Below are positions 34,001 to 62,864 of a stretch of DNA of 64,000 nucleotides, one piece after another (the stretch's first letter is position 1; each line of letters starts with the position of its first letter). A model generated the notes under the pieces. It was not told where the DNA came from, searched no databases, and saw only the letters and a list, made by a program, of their open reading frames with translations. Made by a program: the position numbers and the translations under genes. This DNA is from Pecten maximus (Eukaryota), in contig NC_047024.1 of assembly GCF_902652985.1 (NCBI RefSeq), forward strand, positions 39,370,001 through 39,434,000, in the 5' to 3' direction.

Positions 34001-36304
34001 ACAAAATATTAAAAAAAAAAAAAGTAAGACCAATTTGAGTTATGTTTTGTCTTTGGGTCCACAAAATCATTAAAAATTAAACCCTTCAGATTTATAAAGT
34101 TTATGCATTTATTTGACTTCTGACTGGTCTTCTGAATGCCCTGTTCAATGACATGTTATGTATGGCAGTTTCATGTTAATTGGTTGGTGCGATAATTTTG
34201 ACCTGTCTATAAAGGCAACCTGTCTATATTGACCGTTTTTCTGTCTCCCCTTGGGTGGTCGTTATAGACAGGTTTGACTGTATATAAATTATGTAATTTG
34301 TATATATTTATATAAATTATGTGATTAATGTATATTTATATAAATTATGTAATTTGTGTATATTTATTTAGGTTTATAATTCGTTTATATTTATATAAAT
34401 TATATAACTTGTATATATTGATATAGATTGTGTAAGCTGCTAACATCACCGATCACAGATGTCAAGGACTTGGCTGCAGATTTCTTGTTTGTTTTGTGTA
34501 AAGAGAGTGGTAAGGATATTTTTGATATGAATACAGAATTGTTGAACCTTAAAGATAATGATGCAGTGCATATGCTAATTAATTAGTGAAGTACCATATT
34601 AACTTAAGAATGGTTTCTTTTGCTAAATAGATGGATATATTGTAAGTGTTTCATATAATAATTTCTCATAATTTGTCCAAAATAAACCTCCAGTAATTCA
34701 AGAATATTATGATGGGTATATAGCACACAATTTTACACATTTCTGTGATGGCTCAATCAAGACTAATGGTCCTCAGGGGAAAATACGGCGGTTTATGTTT
34801 CTGATGGAGCTGAGATCATATAATGTCTTGGTTGTTGTGATTGTGTTCATTGGCAAGAGATTTTACCCTATTCACCCTGGATAGTATGCAGCAAACCCAA
34901 AAACCCCAGCCCCCTTTGTTCATTAGTGATGTAGCCACCAGCTACTACAAGAAAATTGCACCTCAAAACTAACTTTGATCACTGTATATCACATCAATGT
35001 CGCTTAATGAAATATAAATACCTTTGGTATTGTTCTGTCTGTCTAATGAATGACTGTCTTGACCCACAGTTAACAGAATGGTGAAGTACACAGGCTATGG
35101 GAACAGTGCTGGCCTCTTAGCCAACAGGGGTCTTCTGCTCGGAGGAAAGTCAGGGGGAGACTACTCCAGCAACTCAGATGACTCGGACACTGAAGAGTAT
35201 AGCCAATTGCGAGACATGTAAATTCATAGTTTCTAATATTAACTGTAAAAGATTAATTGAATAGATAAAAACAACTTACACTTGTCATTACCTGGGGTAT
35301 GCCAAACTCTATATGAAGAAACCTGTTTAAGAAAACTTTGAACTAGAAAATTGTTCCATATGTTCAGAAGACAGTTTTTACTGTAGTTTAAGTTTGTTTT
35401 TTTTTATAAGTCAACAAATCTTTGTTTTTATTTGATTTATTTATATATATGGATGTCGACTAAGATGCCTAATTAGGCTTTTGTATCTAAACAAATTGGT
35501 TTACACAAAAGTTCAATATTGTTTAACGGATAAGAAAATTTAAGATATCTTTTTAACTGGCAGTAACTGACAAAGTTGTACTTGTTGTAGGGTTAATCCT
35601 GTAACAGGCAGATGGGAGGAGGATAAACCAGATCCTTTCGAGGGAATGAGTGAGGAACAAAAGGAGTTTGAAGCCATGAAACTAGTCAACATGATGCACA
35701 AACTCCAGTGGTGTGTACCTACATCTGTAATACATAGGGCCTTGTATAAAAGGTCTTTCATAGGTTCCATGTCATAAAAAAATTCATTTTACCATGTCTA
35801 AAATGTAAAATGAAAACATTTGTGTTTACTATACCTCATATGAATCACCTAACTAATATTTTGTTGCAAACATTCATGACAACAGCATTGTATCAGACAG
35901 ATTGAAATTTTAAATGATGCTAATCTTACCCCATTACTCTTTCAATGATTACATCACAATACATACCTATGATGTCAAGAAGTTATTATAACGCATTTGA
36001 AACAATTGGCATCTTTGACCAATCACTTCTCCGCTACATGTTATATTGTTTTAAAGTTTTTTTGGGTGATTTCCAACATAATATAAACCATTTTAAGATG
36101 TTTAATGTAAAACAAATATGCATTTAGATTTGCAAATCTTGATATTCTGCAAAATTTTCTGTTATCATCTACAGCCAAGGGATCATCCAGCCGAGTCGTG
36201 TTGACGAGTCTGGACGTCCTCAGCCTGTCGAACATGTCCTGGAACTGATGGAGAACATGACCAACCCAAGTGGAGCGACCGGGGATCAGGAAGATTTGGA
36301 TTAG
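16042..36304 (+). CDS. RIC8: Synembryn / Ric-8 (G-alpha GEF and chaperone), 15 exons, 548 aa
   Basis: Exons 16042-16128, 24285-24332, 25990-26209, 26659-26728, 27148-27223, 27558-27610, 28231-28411, 28564-28658, 30890-31061, 31978-32076, 32640-32704, 34427-34509, 35070-35217, 35591-35710, 36175-36304 total 1647 nt, all GT-AG with consistent phases. Motifs: [94 protein letters not shown]. Confidence 0.96.
18889..22838 (+). mobile_element. Full-length hAT DNA transposon (5-bp TSD, hAT5-like) in RIC8 intron 1
   Basis: Perfect 14-bp TIRs CAGGGACTTTCCTG (18889-18902) and CAGGAAAGTCCCTG (22825-22838). TSD AGTTG at 18884-18888 and 22839-22843. Subterminal ttcccaat repeats at both ends. Encodes a transposase. 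Confidence 0.93.
19140..22657 (+). CDS. hAT transposase (ZNF862/ZMYM1-like DDE), 4 exons, 851 aa
   Basis: Exons 19140-20367, 20678-21504, 21808-21956, 22306-22657 (2556 nt, open). TTF-type Zn finger (YPWL..YLCKLC..H..H), [25 protein letters not shown] (CxxH), TTRWLS and the C-terminal dimerisation motif [12 protein letters not shown]. Confidence 0.92.
24637..25867. repeat. 30-bp minisatellite, about 41 copies
   Basis: Unit agtataggagttaactcttagttagggagg with variants, in RIC8 intron 2. Confidence 0.95.
29229..30745. repeat. 20-bp minisatellite, about 75 copies
   Basis: Unit gagtaccaggtaatacatat in RIC8 intron 8. It produces the spurious minus-strand ORFs in this region. Confidence 0.95.
31038..31510. 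repeat. Tandem copies of the RIC8 exon 9 end and donor (35-bp units plus longer diverged units)
   Basis: ttctctacaacaggttagatgtggtagtaacattg x4-5 matches the exon end CTCTACAACAGGCTAGACGTG|gtagtaa. Confidence 0.88.
32920..34430. repeat. AT-rich ~29-bp degenerate repeat abutting the RIC8 exon 12 acceptor, split by a MITE
   Basis: tatatttatatagattatgtaatt-type units at 32920-33180 and 34281-34426. The last unit contains the real acceptor atatag|ATTGTGTAAG. Confidence 0.7.
33185..34280. mobile_element. Tc1/mariner-pogo-type non-autonomous element
   Basis: TIRs cagtcaaacctgctctaacgacc ... ggtcgttatagacaggtttgactg with TA on both flanks, and subterminal cctgtctata repeats. Confidence 0.85.
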
Positions 36305-54416: not shown

Positions 54417-57400
54417 TTACTGTCCATTAATTTTGGCTGGATCACCAAGTGTGGCATCCCAGATTTTCATTTTGTCTCCGCCAACAGAGTTCTTTGTTTT
54501 AGCCCATTTGTCAGCAGATTTGTCTCCATGGGGAACACCAAACATGGCATCACCAAGGTCGGAGCTTAACTCAGCCAATATCTTAGGGTCTTTGTAGTGT
54601 GTCACAGCTTGTGCCATAGCAACTGCCCGCTTTGCGGGATTTGAACTTTTGAAAATTCCAGAGCCTACGAACACACCATCCACCCCAAGCTGCATCAAAA
54701 GGGAAACATCAGCTGGAGTAGCTGCAATAGAAAACACGTTTAACAGTAAGGTATTGGTTGATAGCATATGCAAAATTAAAGATTGAATTCAATCAAATAT
54801 AATATGTTTCAAGACTTGAAAAATTTTATTTCAAATAACTTCAACAATATTAGAAAATGGGGAACATAATATCACATAATGATTATAAGAATATTAGAAA
54901 ATTGAGAAACATTTACATATATAAAGTCACAAGTACTGTATTGATTTTCATAATATCACAGGTTTAATTTCAGATCAAAGATCATGCACTTAACTATGAC
55001 CGGTTAAAATGATGGAACCAGTTACCTTATCCGGCAATGTTACCTAATCATTAGTAGATGGTAAGATTCACCGTGTCTAGTTTTACGGGACTAAAGGAGG
55101 CTTTATTTACCTAGGCCCCCTGCGGCAAAGTTGACTACAGGAAGTCTTCCCAGCTCCGCGGTCTTTTTGAGCAGATCGTGTGGCACCCGGAGCTCCTTAG
55201 CGTAGTTATATAATTCAGTCGAGTCCATGGCACTGGCTAACTTGATCTGCTTATTGATTGTTCTGGCATGTTTAACAGCTTCAGAAACATCCCCTTTAGT
55301 GAGTAAAAGGTCAATTCAATGACTGATGCATCAAAAAAGAATTAGAGTGACTAGGTATGATTAAGCCATGAAGAATTTCTTGGTATGAAAAAGTAAAGTT
55401 AGAGCTTTGAAAATATAAATGAAATGAACATAGCCTTTATTCAATATCATTTAAAAGTTCATCATAGGTCAGGGAAATTTAAATTTGTATAAAGCTAGAG
55501 ATTATAGAAGTTCTAGAATGATATGAATATATGCACTATGAAAATTCAGTTCTACACACATGATAATGTTGACTTGATAATTTCTATACATAAGAGATTG
55601 TGACTTGAAACATGTCCTATTTTACTTGTCAGTGTAGTAACAGGTTCATACCAGTGCCTGCTTCTCCCTTTGTCCTGATCATGGCAGCACCCTCGGAAAT
55701 TCTCCGTAATGCTTCACCGAGGTCACGTGCTCCACAAACAAACGGAACCTCAAAATTGTGTTTGTTGATGTGATTCACCTCATCTGCTGGCGTTAAAACT
55801 ACAACAAAATAATCATAGAATTTACATTACACAAATACAGGTACAAAATTAGTATTATTTTACCTATCAGCTAGTCTTGTCTGGTTTACACATAAAGGTT
55901 GAAGTGTGCTTCTGTGACTAACCTAACCTTGTCAAGTTCTCAATCATGATGAAACCCACATGTATGTTCTAATACAAAATCCAGGCTGTTATACAATTCT
56001 ACACGACTGACATCCAGACTTCATCCCCTTCTTTTCCCTTTAAGAGGAGCCGATGTGCCCAATCTATACCCATATTTTGGTATGAATATGAATAAAATTT
56101 CTTTATTCTGAGTTCAAAAATCCAATTACCAATTAGTGTAACTTCAAGAACAGCTTGTAGCTTTACAACATTGTGCTGTATTGAGGTAAAAATTTGTCTT
56201 CTTTTCTGAGGCTTGAAATTGTTCTTGTGTATGGTGGTTTTCATCTCCAGGGGCCTGAAAGTACACCTTTCCAGTCCCTGGGGCCAGACCCTGAGTAGGG
56301 GAAATATTTCTTCAAAAGCCTTCTCAATTCTGTATGAGCAAAAGGTTTTTTGTCCATGTTTTTCGTCTGAAGCATCTTGGAGTGAAAGGGAACCAAATTT
56401 TATAAATAGTGGGCCTGGCCCCACAAGGGCTGGAGGGGGAGCACAGAATAGGAGAAATACAGCAAATGTTTGAAGTCTGTTTTGCTTTAATCACTGCAAT
56501 ATCAATGTGAGTGATACAGGCCCACTTGGCCTCTTGTCCATCACCAACACTTGTCCTTATGAATGATAGAAATGCCTTAGTAAGGCAATCATTTTCTAGC
56601 ACTGATGGTCTACTTTATGAAAGAACTGCTTTGATTAGGTAAGCATTTTATAACACTGATGTTTTAACTTCTGCTAAAACTGCCTTAGTAAGGCAAACAC
56701 TATCATAACCCTGATGCTCTACTTTCTAATAGAGCTGCCTTAATTAATATGGCAAACATTTCTTTAACATGGATCCTCTACCTTCTGATTCATCCACCAT
56801 GTCCACTCCAAGAGCTTGCAGAATCTGGGCCTCTGCGAAATGACCAATCCTTGATTTAGCCATCACTGGGATAGTCACTGCAGCAATAATTCCCTTAATT
56901 TTCATTGGATCAGTCATTCTGGCCACGCCTCCCTCTCTTCTAATATCAGCAGGGACACGCTCCAATGCCATGACTGCACATGCCTAAAAACAGTATTATA
57001 GAACTATTAAAATATTGTCATTATGTACATGTAAATAATTTCAAGATGTTCAAATTTTTTTTTTAGTGATACACATGTTCAGATTTTGGTTATACTAACC
57101 CCAGCCTCTTCAGCAATTCGAGCTTCCTCTGGAGTTGTCACGTCCATTATTATGCCACCTTTGGCCATCTGAGCTAGGCCAGCCTTTACCTTGAATGTCC
57201 CTGCAAACGAGAAATTTATTACATACCGTGGAGTCTTACTTTAGTAATATAGACAACTCTAGGACATGTTTTATAAGGTCTTGTATTTTCCCTGTAGTGT
57301 GAATTATTTTTGATCTACATCATTTGTTTGTATCATCTGGGTAAATTGAAACAATGGATTCCAAATATTTCAGTCATTTCACATTATGGTAACATAACAT

Positions 57401-57889
57401 TATTATGATGCAACAACTTTTTATCAGACTTCATTATGACATTTATAGCTGAAATGAATAACTACATGATGTGAACACACTGATCTGCAGTTATAACTCC
57501 TAGCCTGTGATAACCCATGACGTCATGTAACTTACTGGCTTACCCCTACATGACTTATATTGCCAACTATAGTCATGTTCTGTCGGCTGAACTTAGTTAC
57601 TGGTTTAAATTTACTACCTACATGACTTCGCCCCTTGCTAGGTTTTATCTCACCAACTACGTTAGAGTCATTGTTCTGTAGACTTTAGTAAGTTACTGGT
57701 TTACCGCCTACATGACTCCACCTATTGCTAGGTTTGGCATTGTTGTCTATAGTTGTGTTCTGTTGGCCTTAGTTAATTACTGGTTTACTGTCTATATCAC
57801 GCCTATTGCTAAGATTCGACTCATTGTTTTGTCAGAGTCCAGCTTTTACAACAGTACTTACCAGTCTGTGTAGAGACAGCGTCCTTCAT
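54417..57889 (-). CDS. PDX1: Pyridoxal 5'-phosphate synthase subunit PDX1/SNZ/PdxS, 6 coding exons, about 321 aa
   Basis: Exons 57889-57862, 57200-57100, 56983-56782, 55798-55652, 55293-55111, 54721-54417 (966 nt, GT-AG, phases consistent). Motifs: [45 protein letters not shown] (catalytic Lys), [42 protein letters not shown] (second Lys), [29 protein letters not shown]. The symbol refers to the vitamin B6 enzyme, not the homeobox gene. Confidence 0.97.
56571..56786. repeat. Diverged ~55-bp tandem repeat ending at a PDX1 donor
   Basis: gccttagtaaggcaa...gatg(g/c)tctacttt units; the last unit is gatcctctac|cttct, the real donor. Confidence 0.6.
57525..57861. repeat. Diverged ~85-bp tandem repeat abutting a PDX1 donor
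   Basis: ttactggttta...cctacatgact...ttgctagg...tgttctgt units at about 57531, 57597, 57693 and 57777. Confidence 0.6.
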
Positions 57890-57987
57890 TGTGAGATTAG
57901 TGACATCACAGGTCACACCTGTTACAAAAATTAAAAACAATTGATGAAAAGGTCAAAACAATTTATACCGACATCACAAGAGACATT

Positions 57988-59430
57988 GGATGTGATGCGA
58001 CTAAATTGGTTTGTGATGTGACTGCATTGGTTGTGATGTGATTACATTGCTGGTTATGCAACTTCGTTGGTTATGATGTTGGTTGTCATTTGACTTCATT
58101 AGTTGTGACATGACTACACTGGTTTTGATGTGACATGTGGGTTGTGATGTGACTAAAATGGTTGTGATATGAGCATTGGTTGTGATGTGACATGCGAGTT
58201 GTGATGTGACTACATTGGTCGTTAAGTGACAATGTTGGTTATGACATGTTTAAACTGGTTGTGATGTGACTAAACTGGTTATGATGCGACTAAACTGGCT
58301 GTGATAACTATTATGGTTGTGCCATTACTAAACTGGATGTGATATGAGCATTAGTTGTGATGTGACTGAACTGTTTGTGATGTGACTACACTGGTTACAA
58401 TGTGACTACATTGGTTGTGATGTGACTAAACTGGTTGTGATGTGACTACACTGGTTCTGATGTGACTAACTGGTTGTGATATAACTAAACTGGTTGTGGT
58501 GTGATTAACTGGTTTTGATGTGACTTACTGGTTTTGATGTGACTAACTAGTTGTGAATCTGTGATGTGACTAAACTGGTTGTGATGTGACTAAACTGGCT
58601 GTGATGTGAATGCTCTGATGTGACTATTATGCTTGTCACATGACTACACTTTTTTATGTGAACATTGGTTATGATGTGACTCAACTGGTTGTGGTGTGAC
58701 TAAATCTGTTGTGATACGACTACTTTGGATGTGATGTGACTACACTGGCTGTGATGTGAGCATTGGTTGTGATGTGACTAAACTGGTTGTGATGTGAGCA
58801 TTGGTTCTGATGTGATAAAACTTGTTCAGATAACTGGTTATGATGTGACTAAGCTGGTTGTGGTGTGACTAAATTTGTTGTGATATGACTACATTGTGCA
58901 TGATGTGACTACTTTGGTTGTAATGCGACTACACTGGCTGTGATGTGACTAAATTGGCTGTGATGTGACTATATTGGTTATGATGTGACTTAATTCGTCG
59001 TGATGTGACTACATTGGTTGAGATGACTCACATGGTTATAATGTGACTTAACTGGTTATGAAGTGACTAAATTTGTTGTTGTATGACTACATTGTATGTG
59101 ATGTGATTGGTTGTGATTTGACTAACTTTGAATGTGATGGGACTAAATTGGCTGTGATGTGACTAAGCTGGTTGTGGTGTGACTACATTGGTTGTTATAT
59201 GACTACATTGTATGTGATGTGATCGGTTGTGATTTGACGAACTTTGAATGTGATGGGACTAAATTGGCTGTGATGTGACCACATTGGTTGAAATGACTTA
59301 CATGGTTATGATGTGACTAAGCTGGTTTTGGTGTGACTACAATGGTTGTGATGTGACTACAATGGTTAAGATGACTCACATGGTTATAATGTCACCAGGT
59401 TATGTGACAACACGGTTACGATGTGACTCC
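57988..59430. repeat. Degenerate 20-bp minisatellite in the PDX1 5' intron
   Basis: Unit ggttgtgatgtgactaaact, about 70 diverged copies. Confidence 0.9.
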
Positions 59431-60106
59431 ATCGCTTGTGAATTGACAACACTGATTGCAGTACTAGTGTGACAAAATAGTTTGTGTGACTACGTACATA
59501 TACGTGCGTTGATTGTGATGAACACGGCTGGGACGCCCTATGATGTCCTTCATTAAAATCAATATCTTCCTGTTTTTAACCGATTTTATAATTCATGAAA
59601 AGTCATTTTTATTTATGTATTTCGTAATATCGCTTACTAAACCTACGCCATATATCCATGCTCTTTTGACTTACCGTCGCCTGTATATATTTTGCTATTT
59701 CTTTTATAAGGAGACGAATTAATATAAGCTTTAGGCTTGTTTTCGAATCCTTACATTCATGTAATGTGTACAACTTTGCTGTTTACAAAATAAAATACTG
59801 TTTAAACCAAACCTACGCCAGTCCTGGCTGTTGTAAAGCATGCGTAAACAATCTTGTATCTTATTACATGCGACATGGCCTGACGTTGTTTTAGACCTCC
59901 AGTATATCGATATAAAAGAGTGACAAAATGGCTGTTATTTAACATCAACACTTGTATAAGTATGGATACACGTGGTCCGTGTCGTAAAGCTGTACGCGTA
60001 CACTACTCACCATTTACAAGCTTTCCTGTCTCGGCCATTGCTCTGTTTGTCTCCGGTATATTACAGATGTGTTTTACTGGCGGACTTGTCGTCGATAGTC
60101 ACTCAC

Positions 60107-60438
60107 CGGAACTGTATAACGTGTGTAGAGCACTTCACGGTCGAGGTCTTTAAGTAAGGAATTCGATCTACGCTACCTTTTAAATAGTCCGTATAAAACC
60201 TAGAACTGCCTATATTAGCCTACTTTCAACCAGATAAAATAATTCTGACGCAATTCCACATTTATGATGATCTGACCTGCATCTGCCAAGTTCAACTCCG
60301 CCAATGGTAGGACCCTTTTATACCAAGGACAACTGATCGCGTTTGTTTGTGTACCGAACAGTTTCGTAACACGTGTTTTGTAAGACAACATATACAAGTT
60401 ACATAAAGTTTGTGTTTGGCGTAGGACTCTGTCGACAG
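60107..60438. promoter_or_regulatory. Putative bidirectional promoter and first non-coding exons of PDX1 (-) and PDX2 (+)
   Basis: CpG-richer segment bounded by a minus-strand donor CCG|gtgagt (60106-60101) and a plus-strand donor CAG|gtaaga (60439). Both ATG-bearing exons begin with acceptors (exon starts 57918 and 62093), so upstream exons are required. Confidence 0.55.
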
Positions 60439-61553
60439 GTAAGAGATTTAAACTATTATAACCATTTCTGTCGGGAATTTACAGCTGTACAATGCACTCA
60501 TTGGCAGTACATATCGAGGAAAATTTTAAATCTGGTTTTAATTACCAGATCTATACAAGTGCCTGTGAATGCACTGTATGAAACACATTTTGAGTTATAA
60601 CTTATAAGTCGAGACTTGTCAGTTTCATGATAAGAATTATAATTTTGTATGACATTGATATAATATGACAGTGATATTTTCACTGAGAGTGTATGATATG
60701 CTTCTTGTGGCTTATGAAACCATGACTTATATTAGCTAAGCCTAAAACAAAGTGATGAAACCTAGTCTACAAGTGGACTAGGCGGGCCCATATCAGTTAG
60801 AATTTTAGATTGTGACTAAAGAGTTTCAAAAGGGAGATAATTGAACTAAGCCATTCAGCCAAGGAACAGATCAAATTCGAACCAAATATTTTAATTCCTA
60901 CGGAAATTGTCTAAACTACAGAATCCAGAAACATAATTCGTGACTAGATACATTGACTTAGGTGTTGATATATATAGACAGAGACATATATATGTCTCTG
61001 ATATAGATAACTTAAGTCCGTGCTTATATTAACGATCTTGAAACACAACATATGGCTGTGACCTTGAACATCTTGGTTAATGATCAATAGCTACAACAAT
61101 GTACATATATTTCACAAATGGGTGATTATTTTCATATTTTCCACAAGTGAAAAAGAGAAAACGATTCAGGAGTAAAATAACGGGACAATAATGAATTCGC
61201 CAAACAAAGGCCCAGTAGGCCTGTACCACTCGCGTGTTCATAAAAAAATAATTTTGGTGTTGGATACGGAACCCAAATTGACATAGCTCAAAACTATCAT
61301 TCTACACTCCTCGGTAATGGTTTATTTCGAAATGTAAATTTCTGGAACTTATTCTCCGTTCCTATCGCAAAATCAAAACAATTTGATATTCTATATATTC
61401 TCTAGTTTATAAAATTCTATCGAATTGACGATAACACATGAATAATTTATATCATCATATTCAAACAAAACAGACAATGCCAAGGCTAATGGCTTTTTTT
61501 TAGGGAATATTGCAATATAGACTATAGGTATATAACCACGAGGAAAATGTATA

Positions 61554-61712
61554 ACGTGTCTTATGTAACATAAATTATGTCGTATGTAACATAATCAATT
61601 ATGTCTTATGTAACATAATCAATTTTGTCTAATGTAACATAATCAATTGTGTCGTATGTAACATAATCAATTGTGTCGTATGTAACATAATCAATTGTGT
61701 CTAATGTAACAA
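61554..61712. repeat. About 24-bp tandem repeat
   Basis: atgtaacataatcaattgtgtcgt x6-7. Confidence 0.85.
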
Positions 61713-62100
61713 TGATTTAATCTTGTTTGTAACTAGCATTTTAATCGGCTTATAAAATGTTATCAGTCCATAACGTAAAAAAAATGACGTTGCCGTTTAT
61801 AACGTCGCTTTTTATTGGTGGATGGATCAGCGTAATGATTTGTAAGAGAAAATAGTCCATAAATGAAAATGAATTTTTGCAGGGCATAGATTAAATTATA
61901 AAGATTAACTTGAATATACATGTATTTTTATGTTATGGAGTTATAACACAAAAAATCGAAGTGTAAATAGAGTACACTCCGGATTTATTTCACCTCCATA
62001 AAATAAGAAATAAGTTAATCCTTTATTATGAATTATGTCCTTTGTGACATGAGTATGGAGTATGCTATTATGATATTAATACTCTTTTCTAGGATCAAAG

Positions 62101-62463
62101 ATGCCGCCCTCTGGACTTAACGGAAACCAAAAACGACACAGAAAAATCGGCATTCTGGAGGTTCAGGGTGCATTTCAAGAACACAAGGTGGCTCTGATGA
62201 GGGCCAAAACATGTATGCATGTGAAAACAGAACTTGAAGTGGTGGAGGTTCGCCATCCAGACCACCTAGTGCCCGACATGGACGGTCTGATTATACCGGG
62301 AGGCGAGAGTACCACTATTAGTCTATTCCTGAAAAGAAACAATATGGAAGAGCCTCTCCGGAACTGGATACAGACAAAAGGTCACGTGGTGTGGGGAACC
62401 TGCGCAGGGATGATCCTTTTATCAAGGTTTACCGAAAACCAAAAAGACGGCGGACAACCAACG
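62101..62463 (+). CDS. PDX2: PLP synthase glutaminase subunit PDX2/SNO/PdxT, first coding exon (121 aa); gene continues beyond the window
   Basis: KIGILEVQGAFQEH, DGLIIPGGESTT and the nucleophile motif WGTCAGMILL. Acceptor at 62091-62092 and donor ACG|gtaagt at 62463. Confidence 0.93.
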
Positions 62464-62864
62464 GTAAGTCGTATCCGGCACATATCCAGTTCTCAGGATA
62501 TTCATACGGATTATTTGTATTGATAAGCGTATGTTACACCTGACGTTTTCATTACAAAATGAATATCGATTGTATATAATATCAAATTATTTAAGTGTAA
62601 CATATGGTGCCAAAACACAGGGGCCTGAGGATTGAGACACGGAGTGTATGTCGAGACCCGACGTGATGTTTTGGGAGTTATAGGCAGTTGTCGTGTAGTT
62701 ACAAAATTACACTGTAAACACTATCCCAGTGGTAATTGTCTTATTCATGTACTTTGTACTTTACTTTTTACAATAGGAGATGTCCCGACATACTTACTGT
62801 GACTTGATTCACAGAACCCTGTTAAAAATGGAAATATCATGCGACATTTCAACAGCTTGTGACA

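What the first reader, a model, noticed from the sequence alone, without database searches (positions are those of the whole stretch)
54417..62463. Complete de novo vitamin B6 (PDX1+PDX2) pathway in an animal genome
Seen: an intact 6-coding-exon PDX1 with both catalytic lysines and the phosphate-binding motifs, plus a PDX2 exon with PGGEST and the GTCAG nucleophile. Both lie in the same contig as typical eukaryotic RIC8 and FNBP4 genes and carry host-type repeats in their introns. Established: PDX1 and PDX2 together form the DXP-independent PLP synthase of plants, fungi, archaea and many bacteria. Vertebrates, insects and most studied animals lack it, with sporadic exceptions such as a sponge SNZ and horizontally acquired genes in cyst nematodes. 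Inference: this animal, probably a bivalve, may make its own vitamin B6. The many spliceosomal introns point to long residence, either ancestral retention or an old transfer.
Basis: partly seen in the sequence, partly recalled or inferred. Interest (0 to 1): 0.9.

Follow-up and report, generated by a model that had tools for sequence, protein, structure and literature searches.

The report
Scallop PDX1–PDX2 vitamin B6 gene pair
This scallop chromosome carries an intact, expressed, head-to-head pair of the two genes (PDX1 and PDX2) that make vitamin B6 from scratch; the pair is real and looks inherited from early animals, but at least PDX2 is already annotated in public databases for this and many other invertebrates.

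Summary
PDX1 lies on the minus strand with six coding exons (54417-57889) plus a non-coding first exon at 60011-~60135. PDX2 lies on the plus strand with a non-coding first exon at ~60128-60438, a coding exon at 62093-62463, and a last exon 3 kb beyond the window that carries the catalytic FHPE motif.

All splice joints appear in RNA contigs from four separate studies. The first exons of the two genes abut or overlap, so they share a bidirectional promoter.

Catalytic residues are intact in both genes, and each gene is single-copy in the 918-Mb genome. The introns hold host repeats, and a Ric8 gene lies nearby. This rules out contamination.

The two PDX2 coding exons equal, residue for residue, a RefSeq protein named "PdxT-like [Pecten maximus]". 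Named orthologues exist in bivalves, gastropods, a chiton, an annelid, copepods and sponges. In a maximum-likelihood tree they form one animal group (support 91/83), and the molluscs inside it follow the species tree (99/98). This favours ancestral retention over transfer.

The finding is sound but already known in kind (sponge SNZ/SNO, 2001), and PDX2 is already annotated. Enzyme activity is untested. The same stretch was also noted once more by this scan (s1-788517).

The parts
54417..54721 (-). PDX1 last coding exon (ATPAD...GSGIFKS...C-terminal tail, stop TAA at 54417-54419)
   Evidence: Sequence reading. TIGR00343 profile positions 210-273. Matches PDB PDX1.3 residues 233-306.
55111..55293 (-). 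PDX1 coding exon 5
   Evidence: TIGR00343 positions 148-208.
55652..55798 (-). PDX1 coding exon 4, with the second catalytic lysine ([10 protein letters not shown])
   Evidence: The RNA contig loose end at 56782 continues with the first letters of this exon in all four runs.
56782..56983 (-). PDX1 coding exon 3, with the first catalytic lysine ([10 protein letters not shown]) and DESE
   Evidence: Covered by RNA contigs of four runs.
57100..57200 (-). PDX1 coding exon 2 ([11 protein letters not shown]...IIMDV...AEEAG)
   Evidence: The joints 56983/57100 and 57200/57862 appear in RNA contigs of four runs.
57862..57918 (-). PDX1 exon with the start codon (ATG 57889-57887; MKDAVSTQT+G), preceded by a 6-codon upstream ORF
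   Evidence: Sequence. Joints to 57200 and to 60011 in four runs.
60011..60135 (-). PDX1 non-coding first exon. Its 5' end is approximate: the contig end in run X10 is at 60135.
   Evidence: Joint 57918/60011 with AG..GT on the minus strand in four runs. X10 record 1 ends at 60135.
60128..60438 (+). PDX2 non-coding first exon. Its 5' end is approximate: a contig starts at 60128 in run X10. It abuts or overlaps the PDX1 first exon, which makes the promoter region bidirectional.
   Evidence: Joint 60438/62093 (GT..AG) in four runs. In three runs one contig runs through 60008-60436.
62093..62463 (+). PDX2 first coding exon (ATG 62101; PGGEST, GTCAG nucleophile). The last coding exon lies outside the window at L005:1603-1953.
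   Evidence: The RNA loose end at 62463 continues with the first letters of the L005 exon. The two exons together equal P0001 exactly.
57983..59367 (.). 20-bp minisatellite (about 71 copies) inside PDX1 intron 1
59652..59811 (.). 160-bp dispersed host repeat inside PDX1 intron 1
   Evidence: At least 40 copies at 94-100% identity on many chromosomes. It is seen inside unrelated RNA contigs.

Best explanation
This is a host-encoded, vertically inherited PLP synthase gene pair of the scallop Pecten maximus. PDX2 (a class I glutaminase with a Cys-His-Glu triad) would hydrolyse glutamine and pass the ammonia to PDX1. PDX1 would condense ribose 5-phosphate, glyceraldehyde 3-phosphate and ammonia into pyridoxal 5'-phosphate through its two catalytic lysines, as in the PdxS/PdxT complex of bacteria, plants and fungi. 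The two genes are transcribed divergently from one shared promoter region, and their non-coding first exons abut or overlap at about 60130. What is shown: gene structure, intactness, single copy, splicing, expression, host location, family membership, and grouping with other animal PDX2. What is inferred: enzyme activity, complex formation, co-regulation, and the claim that the scallop does not need dietary B6.
For: PF01680 and PF01174 match only this locus in the genome. NCBIfam equivalog TIGR03800 scores 169.4 bits against a cut-off of 105.55 for PDX2. The five larger PDX1 coding exons tile TIGR00343 positions 1-273 of 287 in order. Catalytic residues are present: PDX1 lysines, and PDX2 C101, H213 and E215, which are invariant in 25 animal sequences. 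The PDX1 exons score higher against catalytic PDX1.1/1.3 and PdxS than against the pseudoenzyme PDX1.2. Spliced RNA contigs from four studies carry every joint inside the laid stretch, and their loose ends match the next exons. Differences in the coding exons among the runs are few: the two in PDX2 (62319 T>C, 62352 G>A) are synonymous and none is listed in the PDX1 exons laid, whereas the shared 5' exon region has many substitutions and indels. The host context is clear: a position 39 Mb into the contig, Ric8 nearby, even base composition, and a dispersed host repeat plus a minisatellite in the introns. PDX2 tree: molluscs 99/98, named animals on one side of a branch at 91/83 and in 100% of 200 bootstrap trees relative to the named fungi, plants and bacteria.
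Against: No enzyme assay or complementation exists for any mollusc that I could find. The PDX1 protein was never joined or searched full-length, so its phylogeny and its database annotation were not checked. The contigs are unstranded Logan assemblies, so transcription start sites and strand are inferred from splice-site orientation. The animal branch has only moderate support (91/83), with no choanoflagellates or cnidarians among the named rows. The PDX1 tail is about 25 residues longer than in characterised enzymes, with unknown effect.
Confidence: 0.87

Rival explanations
1. An ancient horizontal transfer brought the pair into the mollusc stem lineage from another eukaryote or a bacterium. 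Introns were gained afterwards, and the genes were not retained from the first animals.
For: The distribution among animals is patchy, and many well-studied groups lack the pathway (established knowledge). Cyst nematodes did acquire these genes by transfer (recalled from memory, not checked here). In the first, thinner tree the sponges did not join the molluscs.
Against: With wider sampling, molluscs, sponges, the annelid Owenia and copepods form one group apart from fungi, plants and bacteria. The mollusc subtree follows the species tree from chiton to gastropods to bivalves. The introns are spliceosomal and the locus is embedded in host sequence.
Confidence: 0.08
2. The genes are intact and expressed but no longer make PLP. 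They might act as a stress or singlet-oxygen resistance factor or as a regulatory pseudoenzyme like plant PDX1.2, or PDX2 might serve another amidotransferase role.
For: Activity is untested. The PDX1 C-terminal tail is extended, with a lineage-specific KIW(D/N)xTLG motif. The tail matters for catalysis in known enzymes (established knowledge).
Against: Every catalytic and phosphate-binding motif checked is kept. Scores are clearly higher to catalytic PDX1.1/1.3 than to PDX1.2. PDX2 passes the equivalog cut-off. Both partners are retained together and share a promoter region.
Confidence: 0.04
3. The locus is a contaminant or an assembly chimera with a non-animal organism.
For: None found.
Against: The locus lies 39 Mb into the contig. 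GT-AG introns hold a repeat present in at least 40 copies on other chromosomes. Ric8 lies 20 kb away. Composition is even. Spliced RNA comes from four studies of the same organism label. Orthologues occur across molluscs.
Confidence: 0.01

Closest known systems
RefSeq protein 'pyridoxal 5'-phosphate synthase subunit PdxT-like [Pecten maximus]' (P0001) and its mollusc orthologues
   Same: P0001 equals the two PDX2 coding exons of this locus residue for residue. Named orthologues exist in Ylistrum, Mizuhopecten, Mytilus, Saccostrea, Pinctada, Sinanodonta, Mercenaria, Mactra, Mya, Lottia, Patella, Haliotis, Littorina, Babylonia, Pomacea and Liolophura.
   Different: Nothing differs. It is the same gene, named by an automatic pipeline, and no experimental work was found.
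Sponge Suberites domuncula SNZ/SNO (Seack et al. 2001, Biochim Biophys Acta 1520:21; cited in PMC3078890 and PMC7954711)
   Same: It is an animal-encoded PDX1/PDX2 pair. The sponge SNO (P0066) groups with the scallop PDX2 in the animal clade at 46% identity. I recall that the sponge genes are also linked head to head, but the paper is not held in the library and I could not check this.
   Different: The phylum differs. The scallop genes have non-coding first exons that abut or overlap, and long repeat-filled first introns.
Yeast SNZ1/SNO1 and bacterial PdxS/PdxT, plant PDX1.1/1.3 with PDX2 (solved structures 2NV2, 2ISS, 3O05, 5LNR)
   Same: Same two families, same catalytic residues. Identity is high in the conserved core exons. 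The yeast pair is divergently transcribed (from memory).
   Different: The scallop genes have 5 and 1 coding-region introns plus one 5'UTR intron each. PDX1 carries a C-terminal extension of about 25 residues with a KIW(D/N)xTLG motif, shared with its closest unnamed fragment relatives.
Cyst-nematode (Heterodera) SNZ/SNO acquired by horizontal transfer (recalled from memory, not checked here)
   Same: It is another animal with both genes.
   Different: Those genes are reported as bacterial-like transfers. The scallop PDX2 instead groups with sponge, annelid and copepod genes.

Membership tests
PDX1 / PdxS / SNZ (PF01680, TIGR00343) | Profile match over the whole family model | tested here: met
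   PF01680 positions 2-207 are covered by four exons, each above the cut-off. TIGR00343 positions 1-273 of 287 are tiled in order by five exons. The exon scores for NF003215 sum to about 401 bits against a cut-off of 395. This is a rough sum, because the joined protein was not scored.
PDX1 / PdxS / SNZ (PF01680, TIGR00343) | Two catalytic lysines (B. subtilis K81 and K149; Arabidopsis K98 and K166), plus the D24, DESE and GSGIF phosphate-binding motifs | tested here: met
   [30 protein letters not shown] and GSGIFKS align to solved PDX1 chains.
PDX1 / PdxS / SNZ (PF01680, TIGR00343) | PLP formation from R5P, G3P and ammonia | not testable with these tools
   This needs an enzyme assay or complementation.
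PDX2 / PdxT / SNO (PF01174, TIGR03800) | Equivalog-level profile match | tested here: met
   TIGR03800 scores 169.4 bits against a cut-off of 105.55. PF01174 is matched by both exons. The best PDB hits are PdxT/Pdx2 chains, with E-values down to 1e-34.
PDX2 / PdxT / SNO (PF01174, TIGR03800) | Cys-His-Glu catalytic triad and the PGGEST oxyanion region | tested here: met
   C101 (GTCAG), H213 and E215 (FHPE) and P66-T71 are invariant in 25 animal sequences and align to T. maritima PdxT.
PDX1-PDX2 complex | The two subunits bind each other (12+12 assembly) | not tested
   This is inferred from the family.
Divergent SNZ/SNO-type gene pair with a shared promoter | Head-to-head orientation with adjacent 5' ends | tested here: met
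   PDX1 first exon at 60011-~60135 (-) and PDX2 first exon at ~60128-60438 (+). Contigs merge across the two in three of four runs.
Divergent SNZ/SNO-type gene pair with a shared promoter | The same linkage in other animals and fungi (conserved microsynteny) | not testable with these tools
The metagenome scan returned only intron-less matches at 39-47% identity.

The most novel reading that the evidence does not exclude
De novo vitamin B6 synthesis is functional and widespread in marine invertebrates: all mollusc classes sampled, some annelids, copepods and sponges. In that case the textbook line 'animals cannot make B6' holds only for the lineages that lost the genes. The PDX1-PDX2 head-to-head unit with a shared promoter would then be an ancient linked pair, kept from the common ancestor of fungi and animals down to scallops.
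Probability: 0.45. Interest if true: 0.5.

Novelty: already known. Interest (0 to 1): 0.3.

Why it matters
Reviews still state flatly that animals cannot synthesise vitamin B6 (for example PMC7954711). This locus shows that a commercially important bivalve carries and expresses the complete two-gene pathway. The database hits show the same for many molluscs, an annelid, copepods and sponges. This bears on invertebrate nutrition and aquaculture feeds, on how host-symbiont vitamin exchange is read, and on the history of vitamin dependence in animals. None of it is a new kind of biology, and the pathway, its animal occurrence and the PDX2 annotation are already on record.

Tried and rejected
1. 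It was searched exon by exon, so no full-length PDX1 search, tree, fold or complex prediction was made.

2. The representative search with the last PDX1 exon returned mostly unnamed C-terminal fragments. The three full-length representatives I inspected (P0165, P0183, P0249) were not usable animal PDX1 sequences: two have unrelated N-terminal halves and P0183 is fungal-like.

3. A profile of PDX1 exons aligned on a full-length scaffold (A3) was dominated by the scaffold, which proved to be fungal. It listed only fungal-named or unnamed proteins, so the RefSeq PDX1 entry of Pecten maximus was not recovered. The first alignment (A2) had misplaced the second coding exon.

5. The metagenome scan with the animal PDX2 alignment gave only contiguous matches at 39-47% identity. 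These look bacterial or transcript-like and say nothing about synteny.

6. Ten literature searches found no open-access paper on mollusc, annelid or copepod PDX genes. Only citations of the 2001 sponge paper turned up, and that paper is not held.

7. The first, thin PDX2 tree could not place the molluscs relative to sponges and bacteria. It was superseded.

8. The RNA contigs place non-coding first exons of both genes back to back at about 60130, with no measurable spacer.

9. FNBP4 was not checked.
Full report
**What is there**

The window is G000:C10:39370001-39434000 of a 918,306,378-base assembly in 3,983 contigs. Pfam SOR_SNZ (PF01680) and SNO (PF01174) each match the whole genome at this one locus only. 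Both genes are therefore single-copy.

Reading the minus strand gives six PDX1 coding exons with canonical AG/GT borders:
- 57889-57862, holding the ATG
- 57200-57100
- 56983-56782
- 55798-55652
- 55293-55111
- 54721-54417, ending in TAA

The lengths add to 963 nt (321 codons). The four split codons read Gly, Val, Gly and Ala, which are the residues homologues have at those places.

PDX2 starts at ATG 62101. Its first coding exon ends at a GTAAGT donor after 62463. The last exon lies outside the window at L005:1603-1953, which would be window coordinate 65507-65857. It is preceded by a TTTCAG acceptor and holds FHPELT and the stop.

**Expression and true gene ends**

Logan contigs of four runs from four studies, all carrying the same organism label, were laid on 56700-62600. 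They show these joints:
- 56983/57100
- 57200/57862
- 57918/60011 (AG..GT on the minus strand)
- 60438/62093 (GT..AG on the plus strand)

The loose ends at 56782 and 62463 continue with the first letters of the next PDX1 exon and of the out-of-window PDX2 exon.

Each gene therefore has an extra non-coding first exon: PDX1 at 60011-~60135 and PDX2 at ~60128-60438. In run X10 the two transcripts are separate contigs that end and start at 60135 and 60128. In the other three runs one contig runs through both, so some transcripts overlap.

The pair thus shares a bidirectional promoter region with no measurable spacer. Contigs cannot give strand or exact starts, so the orientation rests on the splice-site letters.

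The arrangement holds, but the spacing does not.

Differences among the runs are many in the shared 5' exon region. In the coding exons I found only two, and I checked that both are synonymous (62319 ATT>ATC, 62352 GAG>GAA).

**Family membership and catalytic residues**

The two PDX2 coding exons equal, residue for residue, the 237-aa protein P0001, named 'pyridoxal 5'-phosphate synthase subunit PdxT-like [Pecten maximus]'. I used P0001 as the full-length PDX2.
- It passes the NCBIfam equivalog TIGR03800 (169.4 bits, cut-off 105.55).
- It aligns to solved PdxT chains.
- Its Cys101, His213 and Glu215 are invariant in 25 animal sequences.

The PDX1 exons tile TIGR00343 positions 1-273 of 287 in order. 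They hold both catalytic lysines and the phosphate-binding motifs. They score higher against catalytic PDX1.1/1.3 and PdxS than against the plant pseudoenzyme PDX1.2.

The PDX1 tail is about 25 residues longer than in characterised enzymes. It carries a KIW(D/N)xTLG motif shared with the closest unnamed fragment relatives.

**Host origin**

- The locus sits 39 Mb into the contig.
- Base composition is even across the window.
- Ric8 exons lie at 35054-35708.
- PDX1 intron 1 holds a 1.4-kb 20-bp minisatellite and a 160-bp repeat with at least 40 near-identical copies on other chromosomes.

Contamination or a chimeric assembly is excluded as far as these data go.

**Where it comes from**

Named PDX2 orthologues are found in:
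- Bivalves: scallops, mussels, an oyster and a pearl oyster, a unionid, and venerid, mactrid and myid clams.
- Gastropods: patellogastropods, abalone and caenogastropods.
- A chiton.
- The annelid Owenia.
- Three copepods.
- Three sponges.

In a careful maximum-likelihood tree of 73 rows (LG+C20+F+G4, quick version) the molluscs form one clade (99/98). Their internal order follows the species tree. All named animals lie on one side of a branch (91/83). They are a single change relative to the named fungi, plants and bacteria in all 200 bootstrap trees.

This favours retention from early animals with many later losses over a transfer into molluscs. Three caveats apply:
- Support for the animal branch is moderate, and the bootstrap had not fully settled.
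- No choanoflagellates or cnidarians are among the named rows.
- PDX1 could not be treated in the same way.

**How it most likely works**

By inference from the families, PDX2 hydrolyses glutamine and channels ammonia to PDX1. [quoted passage not shown] The shared promoter would keep the subunits co-expressed. No assay exists for this species that I could find.

**What is known already**

The sponge SNZ/SNO pair was published in 2001; its citation appears in PMC3078890 and PMC7954711, but the paper itself is not held. PDX2 of this very locus and its orthologues are named in RefSeq. Reviews nevertheless still say animals cannot make B6. Ten literature searches found no open paper on mollusc, annelid or copepod PDX genes.

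**What could not be done**

- The metagenome scan gave only intron-less matches at 39-47% identity.
- One protein search was wasted on a fungal-dominated profile.

As a result, conserved linkage and intron positions in other animals, and the PDX1 annotation, remain unchecked.

**Verdict**

The feature is already known in kind, and PDX2 is already annotated. Interest is modest.

Noticed in passing
window 57886-57906 (-): A six-codon upstream ORF (MSLISQ, then stop) sits in the PDX1 start-codon exon. Its TGA overlaps the main ATG (AATGA), which could allow termination-reinitiation control of PDX1 translation.
   Followed up: no
window 59652-59811: A 160-bp dispersed repeat has at least 40 copies at 94-100% identity on many chromosomes. 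It also appears inside unrelated RNA contigs, so it looks like a young SINE- or MITE-like element.
   Followed up: partly
window 57983-59367: A 20-bp minisatellite (consensus ACATTGGTTGTGATGTGACT, about 71 copies, with higher-order periods of 116-274 bp) fills much of PDX1 intron 1.
   Followed up: no
window 57685-57735: A piece of about 42 bp inside PDX1 intron 2 matches abundant RNA contigs that continue into unlike sequence on both sides. It is probably part of a repeat expressed elsewhere.
   Followed up: no
window 54420-54500 (-): The PDX1 C-terminal extension carries a KIW(D/N)xTLG motif. The motif is conserved in the nearest unnamed fragment relatives (P0121-P0128) and absent from plant, fungal and bacterial enzymes.
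   Followed up: partly
window 60011-60438: The shared 5' exon region is highly polymorphic among RNA runs, with up to 10 substitutions and several indels. The coding exons show only synonymous differences.
   Followed up: partly
window 61556-61711: A 24-bp tandem repeat (6.6 copies, 90% matches) lies in PDX2 intron 1.
   Followed up: no
   Followed up: partly
I did not examine it.
   Followed up: no
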